Source: Stylophora pistillata (lineage: Eukaryota). Taken from it: a DNA stretch of 63,709 nt. Positions 19,828 through 58,203 of this stretch are shown here, piece after piece; position 1 is the stretch's first letter; each line of letters starts with the position of its first letter. A program made the position numbers and the translations under genes. The notes beneath the pieces were generated by a model. It made no database searches and was not told the DNA's origin. It saw only the letters and a list, made by a program, of their open reading frames with translations. The stretch lies in contig NW_019218072.1 of NCBI RefSeq assembly GCF_002571385.2, forward strand, positions 324,290 through 387,998. The letters are read 5' to 3'.

Positions 19828-21580
19828 TTACATCAGTTTACGACCATGCATTTCTAGTTCCAGTTCCCTTAAGGTTCTATCTATCTCCGCGTCGTATTGT
19901 TTGATCCGATCTGCGTCCTGTTCGTCATTCAGGCTGGCTCCAAGGTCTCTGATGAAAGGGTCCTAAGACAGATTTAACATTATTTTTATTACTTTTTGTA
20001 CAACAGTGGTTCGAGCTTTGGAAATGAACTCTCCATAGAGTCTTGATACCAAAGGAAACGCTTCTTTGAAACTCGCTTCTTGAGTGCTCTTCCGAAGTGC
20101 TTCATATCTTCCTACGCATGAAACAATTGTTTTATAATTTCTTCCATGAGAACATTTTCAAATGACTGTCATAAAAACAAAACGAAAGAAATCACAACAG
20201 CCAATCATAATAATTGAAGGTTCGCGTCATCATTAGCCAAGGGGACTCAAAGAAAAAACAGGCAAACCACCAAAAGCGCGGGAAAACGCGGGCGACCAAT
20301 CACGATTGTTTTCCTTTGGCGTCTGACCAATCACAGACCGAAGTAAGGCAAAACCAGAACATCCTGGATTTCTTTCGACACTTTGAAAATGACTCTGCTA
20401 TCTAAAACCATTAGCTGTGTAAAGAACGACCGCAAACTGCACTAGTCCATCTTACCGCTGCGACCAGAAAGTGTGAAAAGAAGCCTTAATGTCAAACAAG
20501 GAAGCAATAACGTACCATGTCTTTGCTTTTGGCCTCATCATCTTTCTGTGTCTGCTTTCTTCGACAACCCATAAACCCAGGGGATACTCGGCATTTCCGC
20601 TTCTGCGGCTCTCGTTTTTCGAAAGTGTCCCCATTCTGGAGTAAATTTTCTTTTTTCCTCGCCTCCTAAATCGATGCGCAAATATTTTTTGAGAGTATTG
20701 TCGAAACACCAAAGGGCTTGTTCAGGATCGTTTGAAAAATCCAAAAATAAATTAAACAGGAACAAGTTTAAGCACATTGCAAATTCCCTCGCGCTGCAAC
20801 TTTCATGCTCCTCTGTCAAAAGGCAGATATGATATGCAACAATTACAAGCTTAAGGGTACACAGACGAGGTATTGATCACACGAGTGAAACACAAAACAG
20901 ATAGACCGTTTGCATTTGACTCTCATCACCAGTAATTATAAAAACAATACAAAGTGCTGAACCTTTACAGCAAGTACTTGCGCTTCAAAGAAAGATCAGT
21001 TATACTTGGGGAAGAGCAAGAGCACAATGGCACATATTAGCGGTAAATATTTCTCTTACCCAGTTGAGTATGTCTCGAATAAGAGTCCTCTTTAATTCTC
21101 CGTCTGTGAGACTTTGTTGGAGTTGAATCTTTGACGCTGTGTCTTCATTGTTATACGTTCTGTCTCTTGAAGGGATACTTCCTGTTTGTTCATTTCTCCT
21201 CCAAGGATAGCGATCAAAGTAGTCCTGAAAGACTCCCTCTTCCCCCGGAAACACCTTTAACAAAAGTTCAAGGCTACTCAGTTCAAGTAAAACTTTTCAT
21301 ACGTCACCAAATAGATTGTCTATGCGAGCTCATCACCACACAGTGGTCAAATGTTGGGCATGCGCGAGGAAATCAATTCTGGCTGGCCGCGCCCCAATGA
21401 AAAATGGATTGAAATGAATAACGAAAGATACGAAGCAAATAAACTGTTAATGTCATGGTTTACCTTATTGTAAAGATTGTCCTTTTCTTCTCTTTGAATG
21501 GACGAGAAAGGAAGGGAAGCGCATAGAATTATGCAGAGATTTACCAGGAGTAGCAACGAGACGCTTCTCATGTATGGCAT
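19828..21580 (-). CDS. Secreted prepropeptide A (about 198 aa); join complement(21580..21464,21254..21060,20665..20516,19962..19828)
   Basis: Signal peptide MRSVSLLLLVNLCIILCAS. All introns are GT-AG, phase 0. Exon 3 encodes EKREPQKRK-CRVSPGFMGC-RRK. The last exon ends ...RELELEMHGRKLM*. Confidence 0.78.
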
Positions 21581-24500
21581 GGCTTGACTTGCTCTCGAAT
21601 CAAAGTAATATAATCCAGTTGTAATCTGTGAAAAAAAGAAATAAATAAACGTGACGCTTCTCAGGTATGCCATAGCTTGACCTGCTCGTCAATCAAAATA
21701 AGATAATTCAGTTATTTATCTGCGAAAAAAAAAAAAAAGGAAGGGCGATGCAAAATTGTGCTTGACAATGACCTTCAGCCTTTACCCAGGCATTAGTTGT
21801 TTTTTCTTCTTTTGTTGGCCGTAAATATGAGATTTATCTTTCGTTAAAAGATGAAAGGGATATTCGGAAGACCTATAAGAAGTCGCTCGTTCATGGCGAT
21901 CGTCAGAGAAAGGAATGTCCTTTTGAAAAAACATTTTCGGTAGTACTGTTTTCTGTCTCGACAATCTGAGCGGAATTTTATATTATATGCTAGTAACAGT
22001 CGAAGTCGAAACGGAAATTGAATGACACATGTCAAACGGAAATGACTTCTGGTGGCGATCACGTCCGAATCGGCTGTAATTACGAATCAGCACGTCCCAT
22101 TCGAGTATATTGGGTTTTATTTCATTGACCAAATCATCCATTCTCAGAGTTACATCGTAGCGCATCATTCAAAACAGTGATGATCCTGCAGTGTTTGTTA
22201 ATTCTCTAGGGAAAATATCCATGAAAGAAGAAGTGTTGTACGCAAGCAGTACACAGGTAAATTATATTAATTTCATGTTCAGAGTCTAAACTTTACTATA
22301 ATATAACGATTGATACTTGAGTTACAAAAGCGTAGAAAGGTTTCTCTTCTATTAATCACGCAGTGTATTCTCAAGATTTTAGACCTTCAGATAACAGCAA
22401 AAAAATTTCGCATTATTGCCGTTAGATCCAACACGTGGTCTCTGATTATAAATTTGTGTTACATTTCCAAAAAATCGTGGAAGGATTTCCTGAATATCCG
22501 TTATATACTTAGCTCATTAGAATTCTAGACGGTAAAGGATTGAAATGAAATGCTGAACATTCCACTGATCTCGTAAGTTTTATTCAGGAAGCTTGGATTT
22601 TTCATTTCATGCCCTAAAACTATCGGAAGAACGTTGAAGTATAACCCTCAGTAGTCAAACATTTGTGCGAGAAATGGTTTTGTTTCATTGGAGTTTATAG
22701 ACGATCTGTTGTCATTCTTAAAATAGCTACTGGTTTTTTTTTTTTTTTTGCACATTTTAGGAACTGTTACTTTGGTCTCCATGTGAAATATTTCTGTAAT
22801 TATGAAACAATAACCATTCCAGGATTGGTTGCTTTGGGAGCCATTGCTGCATGTCTTTTTTCCAGATGGGAAAAAAATGACAATAAAAGATGAAAAAAAA
22901 AAAAAAAAAGAACAACAACAAATGAGAAAAAGATTACGAAAACCTTGGTAGCAGGCTTTACCTCTTTGTTCTTTATGTGCCTCTTAACGTCACATCATGT
23001 AACTTCAGCAACTCATAACTTAAATCCGTTTCCGAATAAAGATGACAACGATAATAAAGAGTATTACTATTGATGGTAGCTGGTAACGGTACATTGAATG
23101 ATGGCATTAATATAGAAAGGAAAAATTGTTTATGCATAATACACCAAAACGATCTTAGTGCGATTTCGAAAGAAAAGCCACTTAACGTCAGTTTGTTTGA
23201 TGGTTGCTGAATTCATGTGCGAAGAAATCTCCCGTGCTTCTGAAACGGGATGTGCTAAGACCAAGAAAAACGTCGTCTAAGAACAGATAACGGTGAAAGT
23301 GCGAACAGCGGTAATCCGCCCAAGAATTCAAAATGGCGGATGACCAAACGGAGAAAGATCTGAGCACTACTTTTGAACGCGCCCTTCGATCTTCGTAGTG
23401 GAAGCGAAAAACATGGAAGATAAACGAAGTTTTTATCGAAGGGTTTTACGCTAGAACTTTGACATCAAAGTTGTATTTTGCTCTGAAATATATAGCAGGT
23501 GCGATAGAAATCGGCCTTGTGTGACGTGAGTGTCTCGCAATTAATTCTAGGCGACTAAACATTGGAACAAGTAATTAAGAACTACATTCAACTGCACTGC
23601 AAACATGTCAATACTCTAACTATTAATGATTATACAACTTGACCTTAGTGAAATTTCCTTTCAATATTTCAAGTTTGCTTTTTCATCTGGCGTTATCAAT
23701 AATATCACAAACTGGGCATTTCAAAATAAATTTGAAAGTGATTATGCCACGTAAACATGGTTGTAAATATGACTTAATACCAAAATAAATGGAAAACGTT
23801 TTGTGATAGTATCAACCTGGGAGATACAGATTAATGAATTTCTTCATTCAGGCTTACCGTTCGTGGCACTGCTAGACATAGAAACAGAATATGATGGCTC
23901 GTGCTAGCTCCACACAAAGGCGAAGGTAAGAATTGTACTAAGTTATGATAAAAAATGTAAGTAGAGATTGCATCAGTGAATATTTACTTGCCATCCTCCA
24001 TTTTAAATCTTATGCGGATTACCGCGGTACATTTGTTTCTTGTTCAACGGTCTCGTTTCCAGAAGATATATTTTCTTTATACTTGTTGTTTTCTGAATGA
24101 AGGTCTCAAGGGAATCAGATGTGTGCACGTGAATTAGCGTAAATTTGAGGGACAGTTCCTACCTTGGAAAAAGAAAACATACGAGTGTGTTCCTCGTTCC
24201 TAACTTTAGTTTCATCAAACTTAACATGCGCCAAATTTTAAAGGTGAAATTTACAGAATCTTCAAATAGAGCATTTTTCGCCAAAATTTTCCTTAAAAGC
24301 TAGTTACTTTATTATTTCCCTTTCGATTCTTCGCTATTCTTGACGATAGCCTGCTTTAACCAGACATTTGTTGGTTTTTTCTTTTTTTTTTTTTTGTTGG
24401 CTGTAACTATGAGATTTATATTTCGTTAAAAGATGAAAGTGATATTCGGAAGACTTATAAGAAGTCGCTCGTTCATGGCGATCGTCTGGGAAAGGAATGT

Positions 24501-24685
24501 CCTTTTGAAAAACCATTTTCGGTAGTACTGATTTCTGTTTCGACAATTTGAGCGGAATTTTATATTATATGCCAGAACTCCAGGAATAATCGAAGTCAAA
24601 TCAGAAATTGACTAAACGGACGTGATTTCCGGTAGCGATCACGTCCGAATCGGCTTTAATTACGAATCAGCACGTCCCATTCGAC

Positions 24686-56940: not shown

Positions 56941-57209
56941 GTAAGCAGCTCGTTTACGCATGAGCCCTTTACTTGCATTGATTTACTTATAATTGTTTTG
57001 GAGTGTAAAGGGTTAATGTTCTGTTATTTGTCTCCCACATGTGCGCGACATGTGTTTATCATAGTTAGAGAGAGTGTCACCGGCCAGATTAGACATTACA
57101 AACACACATTTTAGCCTCAAGTAAAAAATTTCCTTGACCATGATTTGCTGAATTTGCATTCTTTTTTTATCTTTTCTATGTTAGGATAGGTACAGGTTAT
57201 ACATACAAA

Positions 57210-58203
57210 ATGATCATGGCACGGCGAGAATTAGCAGTTTTTTTATTGTCCCTGGTAACACTTGCTGTCTGTGCGTTACCCGAACACTCACGCATTCCAA
57301 GGAAGAAAGGGATTGACCCACAGGTATCGTAATTACAACCTTGAAACCGTTGTTCCTCGATGCATAGAGAGGTTCTGGCGAATTGTGAATTCTGTTTGTT
57401 TTGTTAGCACGATCGCCCTTCCCCTTTATTTCATAGCTGTTTGTAATCAGTGAAAACCATAATACACGTCATTTTAACAGTAGTATACCTCATTATTTTT
57501 GTTAGCGATTGATACAGTAAACCATTTAAAATTCAAATCTATATGGATCATAAATAATTTGATTGCGCACACAAAAAAAATAGTTTTGTTAAAATGGACG
57601 TTTACTAACGTGAAAGGCGTATATGAGGTGGACACTTATATCACACATACAGCAAAGGTGTGAGAAATTTTTGTGCTTTCTTTTATGTTTATTTACGAAT
57701 GTTCAACCTTTATGGTTAATTACAGAGCTACATACAGTCGGGTCTCGGAAATTGGATAATTTTGTCAAGGTTCAAGTGCTCAGTAAACATCAGGCACAAA
57801 AAATTACCAAGGACTCAAGCTCTTACCTTTTTTTCTTGCCTTTTTTTCTTTTTGTTTATTCCGTTTCATTTTGTTTTAATTATTTAATGATTGGTTTTCA
57901 AGCGTGCTCATCTTGTTTGTTACGTTTGCAATTCTTTGCCATTTCATTGATTGATTCGTCGAATTATCTACATATTACGCATAGAATGCCAGGAGGGAGA
58001 CTATATCGGCCAAAAAGTTTCAAGATGCAATTCCAAGTACGTTACATGTCTCTAAACTCGAAACGAGCCCGGCAAAAGCATCTTCTACAGATAAAGGACG
58101 ATTTCTGGGTGGAAACAAACGATCAGCACGGCGATGTCTTTCTGGGCACGTATATTTGTGTTTTCCGAAAAAAACGTCGGGCAGACGGCGAGAGTTTGCT
58201 TGA
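57210..58203 (+). CDS. Secreted prepropeptide C (110 aa); join(57210..57323,57985..58203)
   Basis: Signal peptide MARRELAVFLLSLVTLAVCA and a phase-0 GT-AG intron. Encodes KRSARR-CLSGHVYLCFPKKTS-GRRR, which includes an amidation signal. Confidence 0.75.

What the first reader, a model, noticed from the sequence alone, without database searches (positions are those of the whole stretch)
19828..58203. Hidden cluster of secreted disulfide-loop prepropeptide genes (candidate new peptide family)
Seen: the 40-kb 'desert' yields three spliceable genes (A 19.8-21.6 kb minus, B 32.3-34.4 kb minus, C 57.2-58.2 kb plus) with one architecture. A 5'UTR intron precedes a 39/37/38-codon signal-peptide exon, all coding introns are phase 0, and a poorly conserved pro-region leads to a two-Cys loop after a multibasic site: KRK-CRVSPGFMGC-RRK, RKRARRR-CSPGHFGC-RR, KRSARR-CLSGHVYLC. 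A and B share SPG-x-x-GC-RR, and B and C share ARR(R)-C-x-x-GH. About four decayed copies lie between them. Established: signal peptide plus KR/RR/RxxR sites plus G-basic signals is the grammar of prohormone-convertase/furin- and PAM-processed precursors. The loops do not match the RFamide, GLWamide, SCRiP or damicornin patterns I know. Inference: a fast-evolving birth-and-death family of cyclic neuropeptides/hormones, antimicrobial peptides or toxins. It is invisible to ORF scans because the exons are short.
Basis: partly seen in the sequence, partly recalled or inferred. Interest (0 to 1): 0.92.

Follow-up and report, generated by a model that had tools for sequence, protein, structure and literature searches.

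The report
Three linked coral ring-peptide precursor genes
Three small neighbouring genes in the coral Stylophora pistillata are real and are kept in at least three coral genera. Each encodes a secreted precursor carrying one short disulfide ring; two are already annotated as uncharacterised proteins, and the family has no described function or known relatives.

Summary
The claims that the genes are hidden and that the family turns over by birth and death are not supported.

- **Gene B (minus strand)** is spliced as predicted for its first two introns in poly(A) RNA contigs of four studies. It gives a 146-aa protein that NCBI already lists (XP_022797721.1, "uncharacterized LOC111335973"). It ends at the stop at 33506. 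The extra exon proposed near 32.3 kb has no RNA joint and is broken by stops in Pocillopora.
- **Gene C (plus strand)** is the GenBank protein PFX21150.1 (110 aa, hypothetical; UniRef calls it "Secreted protein").
- **Gene A (minus strand, 39+50+44 codons)** is in no protein database I searched. All three of its exons, every GT/AG site, the phase-0 junctions and the stop are kept in Pocillopora and in a more distant coral.
- **Cluster history:** all three genes have 1:1 syntenic orthologues. HMM scans of the window and of the 398-Mb genome find no further copies and no decayed copies.
- **Likely roles (inferred):** C looks hormone-like, with conserved basic sites, ring and Gly-Arg amidation signal. 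B pairs an acidic pro-region with a +6 to +10 C-terminal ring-plus-tail peptide, and its ring is hypervariable among Pocillopora samples, which is defence-like. In A the basic sites around the ring are not conserved, but the C-terminal helix and its G-R-K end are.
- **Gaps:** expression of A and C was not tested. No Pfam, PDB or literature match was found.

The parts
21464..21580 (-). Gene A, coding exon 1: ATG plus a 39-codon signal-peptide exon with donor AAG|gtaaac
   Evidence: The ORF and donor are seen. The same 39-codon exon, with ATG and donor, is kept in Pocillopora (L014 8811-8927, 79% aa) and in a third coral (L023 9375-9491, 51% aa). dN/dS is 0.23. Expression was not tested.
20516..20665 (-). 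Gene A, coding exon 2: 50 codons holding a conserved K-R, the Cys ring (C-x8-C) and a conserved acidic end; acceptor ttag|GAG, donor ATG|gtacgt
   Evidence: Sequence conservation drops immediately after the conserved donor. The splice sites and both Cys are kept in three genera, with in-frame length changes of 49 and 52 codons. dN/dS is about 0.9.
19828..19962 (-). Gene A, coding exon 3: 44 codons plus TAA, an acidic helix ending in G-R-K-x-[ML]-stop
   Evidence: Searches give the exon and its stop. It is 70% (Pocillopora) and 68% (third coral) identical at the aa level, with 25 invariant columns, and the stop is at the same codon. AlphaFold predicts a helix over residues 13-43 with pLDDT 89-95 in the core.
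36458..37346 (-). Gene B, non-coding first exon (5' leader); the 5' end is not defined
   Evidence: The RNA joint 34423->36458 is present in 4 runs. Contigs run from 36458 to 36916 and from 36659 to 37346. The block is 85-93% identical to Pocillopora and 75-85% to the third coral.
34268..34423 (-). Gene B, exon 2: 45 nt of leader, ATG at 34378, and 37 signal-peptide codons, phase 0
   Evidence: RNA joints lie on both sides of this exon. It equals residues 1-37 of P0005 / XP_022797721.1.
33190..33835 (-). Gene B, exon 3: 109 codons (33509-33835) with an acidic pro-region, a poly-basic site, a C-x6-C ring and a cationic tail; stop at 33506-33508; 3'UTR of about 300 nt
   Evidence: RNA contigs cover 33188/33229/33244-33836 continuously through the stop. 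Poly(A) signals lie at 33228 and 33181. Database proteins P0001 and P0005-P0010 come from about 47 transcript contigs.
57210..57323 (+). Gene C, coding exon 1: 38-codon signal-peptide exon, donor CAG|gtatcg
   Evidence: It equals residues 1-38 of PFX21150.1. It is kept in Pocillopora (63-66% aa) and in the third coral (56% aa) together with the donor.
57985..58203 (+). Gene C, coding exon 2: 72 codons plus stop; basic site K-R-S-x-R-R, ring C-x7-C, F-P tail and a G-R(RR) amidation signal
   Evidence: It equals residues 39-110 of PFX21150.1. The acceptor and frame are kept in three genera. The ring and both processing sites are nearly invariant while the pro-region varies. Nucleotide identity is 86%, against about 75% in the flanks.

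Best explanation
The 40-kb 'desert' between a TMEM121-like gene and a rhodopsin-type GPCR gene of Stylophora pistillata holds three real, anciently duplicated genes (A, B, C). Each makes a small secreted prepropeptide with a single disulfide ring.

**Inferred mechanism.** A signal peptide, on its own phase-0 exon, takes the precursor into the ER, where the Cys pair closes a ring of 6-11 residues. Furin/prohormone-convertase-type enzymes then cut at the conserved basic sites.

**Gene C.** C yields a peptide of about 15 residues that starts at the first Cys, and its C-terminus is amidated from a conserved Gly-Arg. It behaves like a signalling peptide: the mature part is almost invariant in three genera while the pro-region varies.

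**Gene B.** B yields a 21-29-residue, strongly cationic (+6 to +10) ring-plus-Pro/Lys-tail peptide behind an acidic pro-region. This is the layout of cationic host-defence peptide precursors. Its ring changes amino acids quickly between closely related Pocillopora samples.

**Gene A.** A keeps a K-R site, the ring, an acidic amphipathic helix and a terminal G-R-K. It is probably released as one long ring-plus-helix product, perhaps amidated.

**Shown versus inferred.** Shown here: gene structures, B's transcription and splicing, conservation and synteny, and the absence of further copies. Inferred: secretion, cleavage, amidation, disulfide formation and the biological roles.
For: **B is transcribed and spliced**
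- Two GT..AG joints are present in 4 poly(A) RNA runs of 4 studies.
- Identical 146-aa proteins come from about 47 transcript contigs and from NCBI.

**C is annotated**
- C is GenBank PFX21150.1, labelled 'Secreted protein' in UniRef.

**Conservation and synteny**
- The whole interval is collinear with Tara Pacific coral scaffolds, probably Pocillopora, at about 70-75% background identity.
- All 7 coding exons, 4 donors, 4 acceptors, all phases and the stops of A, B and C are kept there and in a more divergent coral (ENA ERZ25067556).
- All length changes inside the exons are multiples of three.
- dN/dS ranges from 0.23 to 0.9 by exon, and is about 0.5 for B and C.

**Paralogy**
- The best non-self hits of B proteins in the window are the A and C rings (Pocillopora B against C, E=3e-5).
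- Leave-one-out HMMs give B->C 8e-4, A->B 0.019 and A+C->B 8.5e-7.
- A B-only HMM ranks C's ring exon as the first non-self hit among the five candidates scored in the 398-Mb genome.

**Functional hints**
- C's basic site, ring and G-R signal are conserved in three genera.
- B's pro-region has pI 4.5-5.4 and its tail pI about 11 in three genera.
- In Pocillopora, 4 of 5 coding differences in B fall in the 7-codon ring. All are non-synonymous and none is synonymous (P=6e-5).
- B's second Cys is shifted by one residue in some lineages, but the Cys pair is always kept.
- A's exon 3 is predicted as a helix.
Against: - There is no RNA evidence for A or C. Neither appears among proteins called on public transcript contigs, and C's cluster lists no RefSeq accession.
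- No signal-peptide predictor was available, so signal peptides are judged by eye plus UniRef's label for C.
- dN/dS of A's ring exon is about 0.9, close to neutral.
- The similarity of A to B and C is weak: the B+C HMM does not find A, and genome-wide the B->C E-value is only 3.8.
- B's non-coding first exon is better conserved than its coding sequence, so the locus may have a further, unknown role.
- The hypervariable-ring signal rests on three haplotypes.
- No peptide, activity or cell-type data exist.
Confidence: 0.7

Rival explanations
1. All three genes are neuropeptide or hormone precursors, each releasing a small cyclic peptide cut out at the basic sites on both sides of the ring.
For: - C fits this fully.
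- In Stylophora all three rings are flanked by basic residues.
- Language-model look-alikes of C are mostly peptide-hormone precursors such as urotensin-2, calcitonin, PDH and DH. The scores are only 0.76-0.78, a level that shuffled proteins often reach.
Against: - The flanking sites are not conserved for A: there is no basic site after the ring in Pocillopora and none on either side in the third coral.
- The site after B's ring is not conserved.
- B's ring is the fastest-changing part in Pocillopora, the opposite of what mature neuropeptides usually show.
- The published scleractinian neuropeptide survey, which covers Stylophora and Pocillopora, lists no cystine-ring peptide family (PMC7523074).
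Confidence: 0.2
2. A is not a relative of B and C. It would be an unrelated small secreted-protein gene that happens to lie beside them and to carry a Cys pair near basic residues.
For: - The B+C HMM does not retrieve A.
- A has a third exon with a conserved helix that has no counterpart at B or C.
- The pairwise E-values are only 0.02-0.07, and that in a search space of just 64 kb.
Against: - A's ring is the top non-self hit of B in the window, and B is the top non-self hit of the A-only HMM.
- A is on the same strand as B and has the same exon logic: a 37-39-codon signal exon, a phase-0 junction, and a next exon that begins with Glu in both A and B.
- The third coral's A ring contains S-G-H-F-G, close to B's P-G-H-F-G.
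Confidence: 0.3
3. A and C, or all three, are not functional protein-coding genes. They would be chance ORFs or non-coding transcripts, and the conserved element at B would be its non-coding first exon.
For: - There is no RNA evidence for A or C.
- Background identity to Pocillopora is already about 72%, so ORFs can persist for a while without selection.
- B's first exon is more conserved than its coding sequence.
- dN/dS is 0.5-0.9.
Against: - In the third coral most intergenic DNA no longer aligns, yet all exons, splice sites, frames and stops are kept.
- Indels inside the exons are all in frame.
- Conservation drops exactly at A's exon-2 donor.
- C's 15-residue peptide is nearly invariant while its pro-region is only about 30-40% identical in the third coral.
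- The Cys pair is kept even where one Cys moved.
Confidence: 0.06
4. The products are venom or toxin components made in cnidocytes or gland cells.
For: They are short secreted disulfide peptides, and B's ring is fast-evolving.
Against: - There is only one disulfide.
- Nothing matches in Pfam or the PDB.
- C's mature peptide is strongly conserved, and the cluster has stayed at three single-copy genes rather than expanding as toxin families typically do.
Confidence: 0.07

Closest known systems
Damicornin-type coral antimicrobial-peptide precursor (Pocillopora damicornis; described in PMC4306955)
   Same: Gene B has the same segmented layout: signal peptide, acidic pro-region, basic cleavage site, then a cationic C-terminal peptide. 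It occurs in the same coral family.
   Different: - Damicornin is 40 residues long with six Cys (three disulfides) and is C-terminally amidated.
- B's peptide is 21-29 residues with one disulfide and has no Gly amidation signal.
- There is no sequence similarity, and no activity has been tested.
Cyclic FRamide neuropeptides of Cubozoa and Scyphozoa (C-x-G-Q-M-C-W-F-R-amide and C-x-S-P-M-C-W-F-R-x-amide; PMC6909153)
   Same: Both are cnidarian peptides with a presumed cystine ring and C-terminal amidation from G-R/G-K-R sites, as in gene C.
   Different: - Those rings are C-x4-C followed by W-F-R-amide. Several nearly identical peptides are reported on one jellyfish precursor, and their N-terminal processing is at non-basic residues.
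- They were not found in the Staurozoa or Octocorallia surveyed.
- Here the rings are C-x6 to C-x11, there is one copy per precursor, the N-terminal site is basic, and there is no WFR motif.
Bilaterian single-copy C-terminal cyclic peptide precursors (urotensin II, somatostatin, MCH, CCHamide types). This comparison rests on my recollection plus weak language-model leads.
   Same: The architecture of C matches: signal peptide, pro-region, a multibasic site, and one ring peptide at the very C-terminus. CCHamides and MCH also have G-H or G-R-V-Y inside the ring, a short-motif resemblance only.
   Different: - No detectable sequence homology was found: Pfam has no hit and the Atlas scores of 0.76-0.78 are within the chance range.
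- The ring sizes and motifs differ.
- No receptor is known.
Ring-plus-helix amidated hormones (calcitonin, CGRP, adrenomedullin type). This comparison rests on my recollection only.
   Same: Gene A's predicted product has a disulfide ring near its N-terminus, a long helix and a terminal Gly-basic signal.
   Different: - A's ring is C-x8 to C-x11, against C-x4-5 in those hormones.
- A's product would be about 70 residues and acidic.
- There is no sequence similarity, and the idea is untested.

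Membership tests
Convertase-processed, amidated neuropeptide/hormone precursors (generic kind) | N-terminal signal peptide | tested here: inconclusive
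   - All three start with M, 1-2 basic residues, 12-17 hydrophobic residues and a small-residue cleavage motif.
- UniRef names C 'Secreted protein'.
- No SignalP-type tool was available.
Convertase-processed, amidated neuropeptide/hormone precursors (generic kind) | Conserved basic cleavage sites on both sides of the bioactive peptide | tested here: inconclusive
   - Met for C in three genera.
- B meets it on the N-terminal side only.
- Not met for A's ring.
Convertase-processed, amidated neuropeptide/hormone precursors (generic kind) | Gly followed by basic residue(s) as the amidation signal | tested here: met
   - C has G-RRR, G-RRR and G-R-stop in the three genera.
- A has G-R-K, invariant in all three.
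- B has none, and its proposed GKR exon is rejected.
Convertase-processed, amidated neuropeptide/hormone precursors (generic kind) | Mature peptide more conserved than the pro-region | tested here: inconclusive
   - Met for C.
- The reverse holds for B's ring within Pocillopora.
- For A, the helix rather than the ring is the conserved part.
Convertase-processed, amidated neuropeptide/hormone precursors (generic kind) | Expression in neurons or endocrine cells, and detection of the peptide | not testable with these tools
   There was no single-cell or peptidomic data at hand. No paper mentions the accessions.
Cnidarian cyclic FRamide peptides | C-x4-C ring followed by W-F-R-(x)-amide, with several peptide copies on one precursor | tested here: not met
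   The rings here are C-x6, C-x7, C-x8 and C-x11, there is no WFR motif, and each precursor has one copy (compared with PMC6909153).
Damicornin-like cationic AMP precursors | Signal peptide, acidic pro-region, basic site and a cationic C-terminal peptide | tested here: met
   This holds for B only: pro-region pI 4.5-5.4, and C-terminal peptide net +6 to +10 with pI about 11, in three genera.
Damicornin-like cationic AMP precursors | Six-Cys array, C-terminal amidation and antimicrobial activity | tested here: not met
   B has two Cys and no Gly amidation signal. Activity cannot be tested with these tools.
Any Pfam family or solved structure | A significant profile match | tested here: not met
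   - Pfam gave nothing below E=0.1 for B, C, the third-coral B or A's exons.
- PDB profile searches gave nothing for the family profile, and only a synthetic helix at E=0.068 for A's exon 3.

The most novel reading that the evidence does not exclude
Gene C would encode the first cystine-ring, C-terminally amidated signalling peptide of an anthozoan: about 15 residues, with the ring C-L-[SP]-G-H-V-Y-x-C. Its receptor could be the rhodopsin-type GPCR gene that has stayed next to it in three genera. Its paralogue B would have been re-purposed, within the same cluster, into a cationic host-defence peptide whose ring is under diversifying selection. That would be a hormone-to-defence (or defence-to-hormone) transition caught in a three-gene cluster.
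Probability: 0.2. Interest if true: 0.7.

Novelty: new member of a known kind. Interest (0 to 1): 0.5.

Why it matters
Published catalogues of coral peptide signals are short. The 2020 survey of scleractinian neuropeptide genes lists seven families and mentions no cystine-ring peptide (PMC7523074).

This work provides:
- Exon-exact models and three-genus alignments for an undescribed family.
- A concrete synthesizable candidate ligand, the C peptide, next to a conserved orphan GPCR gene.
- A candidate cationic defence peptide, B, that is widely expressed in Stylophora RNA-seq and carries a hypervariable ring.

These make direct tests possible: receptor de-orphanisation, MIC assays and single-cell localisation. 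The value is moderate. The kind of gene is familiar, two of the three are already annotated as uncharacterised, and no function has been shown.

Tried and rejected
1. **Chance ORF stitching.** I expected this at first because A, B and C share no DNA similarity. RNA joints and three-genus exon conservation reject it.
There is no joint, the A-exon-3 HMM finds nothing there, and the ORF is broken in Pocillopora.
3. **The 'decayed copies', including 48602-49875.** No HMM hit is better than E=0.5, apart from B's own exons and a 117-bp tandem duplicate of B's exon-3 acceptor inside its intron.
4. **Further paralogues elsewhere in the genome.** Only A, B and C were found. The one other weak hit (contig C237) has a single Cys and looks like chance.
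5. **Word-index protein search with A's ring exon.** It came back blank, but this is uninformative because A's 133-aa product lies outside that search's length window. The exhaustive profile search also found no A-like protein.
6. **Looking up NCBI's own gene table around the window.** Records of this genome are withheld by the tool.
7. **Apparent loss of A's exon 2 in one Tara scaffold (L016).** This is an assembly gap of N, which I did not fill.
8. **Rfam scan of the window.** No family was found.
9. **Literature searches by accession and by topic.** Nothing was found.
10. Exons were searched one by one by reference, and the full-length B and C proteins used are database records. A's joined 133-aa product was never built or searched. 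No complex prediction was run, because I do not claim binding of C to the neighbouring GPCR.

Full report
**Setting**

The window is eukaryotic DNA at 34-42% GC. Earlier notes of this scan and NCBI names attached to proteins encoded here identify it as the coral Stylophora pistillata. Pfam places four genes on the flanks:
- a rhodopsin-type GPCR at 8944-9936 (-);
- a TMEM121-like gene at 16443-17459 (+);
- a second GPCR at 60362-61276 (-);
- a VWA-domain gene from 62383 (+).

The finding concerns the 40 kb in between.

**Observation**

Each has a signal-peptide-like ORF upstream on the same strand, of exactly 39, 37 and 38 codons, ending at a GT. The three loci share no DNA similarity, so I first suspected chance stitching.

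**Gene B: direct RNA evidence**

Poly(A) RNA runs hold about half of the 31.6-37.5 kb interval. I laid contigs of four runs from four studies on it. All four show two minus-strand GT..AG joints:
- 34423->36458, a 2034-nt intron in the 5'UTR;
- 33834/5->34267/8, a 432-nt intron in phase 0.

Exon 2 (34268-34423) carries the ATG at 34378 and 37 codons. Exon 3 starts at 33835, and the contigs read without interruption through the stop at 33506-08 to about 33190. Poly(A) signals sit at 33228 and 33181.

The product has 37+109 = 146 aa. A search with exon 3 alone returned exactly this 146-aa protein from public transcript contigs. Its cluster contains NCBI PFX21162.1 / XP_022797721.1, 'uncharacterized protein LOC111335973', plus five more transcript-derived variants, the six transcript-derived forms lying on about 47 contigs. 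B is therefore real, well expressed and already annotated.

- no joint reaches it;
- its ORF is broken by several stops in Pocillopora;
- an HMM of A's last exon does not match it.

**Gene C**

Exon 2 (57985-58200) retrieved GenBank PFX21150.1, 'hypothetical protein AWC38_SpisGene25836' (UniRef: 'Secreted protein'). No transcript-derived copy and no RefSeq accession is listed for it, so its expression remains untested here.

**Gene A**

A's ring exon found nothing in the word-index search. That search only sees proteins of 31-100 aa, and A turned out to be 133 aa.

Comparative sequence settles the model. The acceptor ttag|GAG and the donor ATG|gtacgt of exon 2 (20516-20665) are conserved, and similarity drops right after the donor. 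A third exon (19831-19962, stop at 19828) follows a conserved ttag acceptor. The model is 39+50+44 codons, with all introns in phase 0.

The exhaustive profile search would have listed an A-like protein, because its ring exon scores 41.6 bits and a 36.9-bit hit was listed. It found none. A is therefore unannotated, and it is also absent from proteins called on public transcript assemblies.

**Orthologues and synteny**

I walked along Tara Pacific coral-metagenome scaffolds. They are probably Pocillopora, the pocilloporid among that expedition's target corals; this attribution is my recollection. Window 14-63 kb is collinear with them at about 70-75% background identity, TMEM121, both GPCRs and the VWA gene included.

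A, B and C each have one orthologue in place. A second, more divergent coral assembly (ENA ERZ25067556, species unknown) came out of the exhaustive search. It has B and A in the same order and orientation on one contig, and C next to the GPCR on another. Most intergenic DNA no longer aligns in that assembly.

In all three genera every donor, acceptor, phase and stop of the seven coding exons is kept. Length differences inside exons are all multiples of three. Stylophora-Pocillopora dN/dS values are:
- A: 0.23, about 0.9 and 0.57 for exons 1 to 3;
- B: 0.48 and 0.53;
- C: 0.61 and 0.46.

This is weak but real constraint, strongest on signal peptides and on specific motifs.

**One family?**

- tblastn of B proteins against the window ranks A's and C's rings as the best non-self hits. 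Pocillopora B against C gives E=3e-5.
- Leave-one-out HMMs give B->C 8e-4, C->B 0.13, A->B 0.019 and A+C->B 8.5e-7. B+C does not find A.
- A B-only HMM run on the 398-Mb genome puts C's ring exon first among the non-self hits of the five candidates scored (E=3.8). A top hit lying 24 kb away with the same exon logic is unlikely by chance. The next hit has only one Cys.
- In the third coral, A's ring contains S-G-H-F-G, close to B's P-G-H-F-G.

I take B-C paralogy as likely and A's membership as plausible but unproven.

No further copy exists in the window or the genome. The 'four decayed copies' and the 'birth-and-death' picture are not supported. This is an old, stable trio.

**What the products look like**

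*Gene C.* K-R-S-x-R-R comes immediately before the first Cys. The ring is C-L-[SP]-G-H-V-Y-x-C, followed by F-P, then Gly followed by R(RR). All of this is kept in three genera, while the pro-region falls to about 30-40% identity. This is the classical signature of a processed, amidated signalling peptide of about 15 residues. Among Pocillopora samples all variation lies in the pro-region.

*Gene B.* The block G-R-[KR]-R-x-R-R is conserved. The part from the first Cys to the stop is 21-29 residues, net +6 to +10, pI about 11, and rich in Pro and Lys. The preceding pro-region is acidic, pI 4.5-5.4. This is the layout described for the Pocillopora antimicrobial peptide damicornin (PMC4306955). 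The dibasic site after the ring seen in Stylophora is not conserved.
- Among Pocillopora samples that differ at under 1% of sites, 4 of the 5 differences in exon 3 hit four different codons of the 7-codon ring. All are non-synonymous and none is synonymous (binomial P=6e-5).
- The second Cys sits one residue earlier in Stylophora and the third coral than in Pocillopora B. The Cys pair is kept while the ring size changes.
- This pattern fits a defence or interaction peptide better than a hormone.
- Stylophora alleles also vary at the stop: a 33-nt deletion and a TGA-to-TGG change.

*Gene A.* The basic residues flanking the ring are not conserved: there are none after the ring in Pocillopora and none on either side in the third coral. 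The ring is C-x8-C or C-x11-C. The conserved features are an upstream K-R, the acidic end of exon 2, and above all exon 3:
- 68-70% identity and 25 invariant columns;
- a predicted helix over residues 13-43 with pLDDT up to 95;
- a terminal G-R-K.

A is more likely released as one long ring-plus-helix product.

**Comparison with known families**

- Pfam gives no hit.
- PDB profile searches give none.
- The exhaustive search of 1.84 billion representatives finds only orthologues of B and C.
- The survey of scleractinian neuropeptide genes, which covers Stylophora and Pocillopora, lists seven families, and its text never mentions cysteine or a cystine-ring peptide among them (PMC7523074).
- The medusozoan cyclic FRamides have a C-x4-C ring and a WFR-amide end (PMC6909153), which this family lacks.
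- Language-model neighbours of C are mostly peptide-hormone precursors, but their scores are in the chance range. B has no usable neighbours.
- No paper mentions the accessions.

**Limits**

The full-length B and C proteins used are database records. A's joined product was never built.
- N runs were left untouched, including a scaffold gap over A's exon 2 in one Tara scaffold.
- Signal peptides, cleavage, amidation, disulfides and roles are inferences.

**Verdict**

Novelty is lower than claimed, since two of the three genes are annotated as uncharacterised. The family is undescribed, apparently restricted to a few coral genera, and offers one clean hormone-like candidate (C) and one defence-like candidate (B).

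Noticed in passing
window 36458-37250 (-): B's non-coding first exon and promoter block is 85-93% identical to Pocillopora and 75-85% to the third coral, well above B's own coding sequence. Only a 19-25-codon uORF starting MSST recurs across species, and there is no Rfam hit.
   Followed up: partly
window 28958-31588: A 2.6-kb conserved non-coding block is 81% identical to Pocillopora, with islands of 67-75% still alignable in the third coral. It has no ORF above 90 aa and no Rfam family.
   Followed up: partly
window 60362-61276 (-), L007 16988-17851, L021 6584-7387: A rhodopsin-type GPCR gene lies convergently downstream of C, about 2-2.5 kb away in Stylophora and Pocillopora and about 4.8 kb in the third coral. 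A ligand-receptor relationship is pure speculation and was not tested.
   Followed up: no
window 21555-21738 and 33801-34047: Short tandem duplications sit at exon edges. A roughly 90-bp repeat duplicates A's start-codon region and creates an in-frame upstream ATG at 21673. A 117-bp repeat duplicates B's exon-3 acceptor inside the intron, and RNA uses the copy at 33835.
   Followed up: partly
window 33485-33517 and 33506-33508: B's stop codon is polymorphic in Stylophora RNA data. One allele has an in-frame 33-nt deletion that removes the stop (148-aa product), and another reads Trp in place of the stop, consistent with TGA to TGG.
   Followed up: partly
window 24400-26700, 40750-41250, 55900-56750: These stretches are absent from the Pocillopora alignment and carry ORFs: a DUF6451 ORF at 40758-41405, and ORFs at 25492-26236 and 55956-56597. 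They are probably lineage-specific mobile-element insertions.
   Followed up: no
window 32585-33175 and 31600-31796: Very high k-mer depth in all RNA runs, with many loose ends at 33012-33014, points to a highly repeated, transcribed element just downstream of B's 3' end.
   Followed up: no
L023 16734-18446 (third coral): In the third coral a VWA_4/hemicentin-like gene, not TMEM121, lies downstream of A. The cluster's outer synteny has therefore been rearranged, although the B-A order is kept.
   Followed up: no
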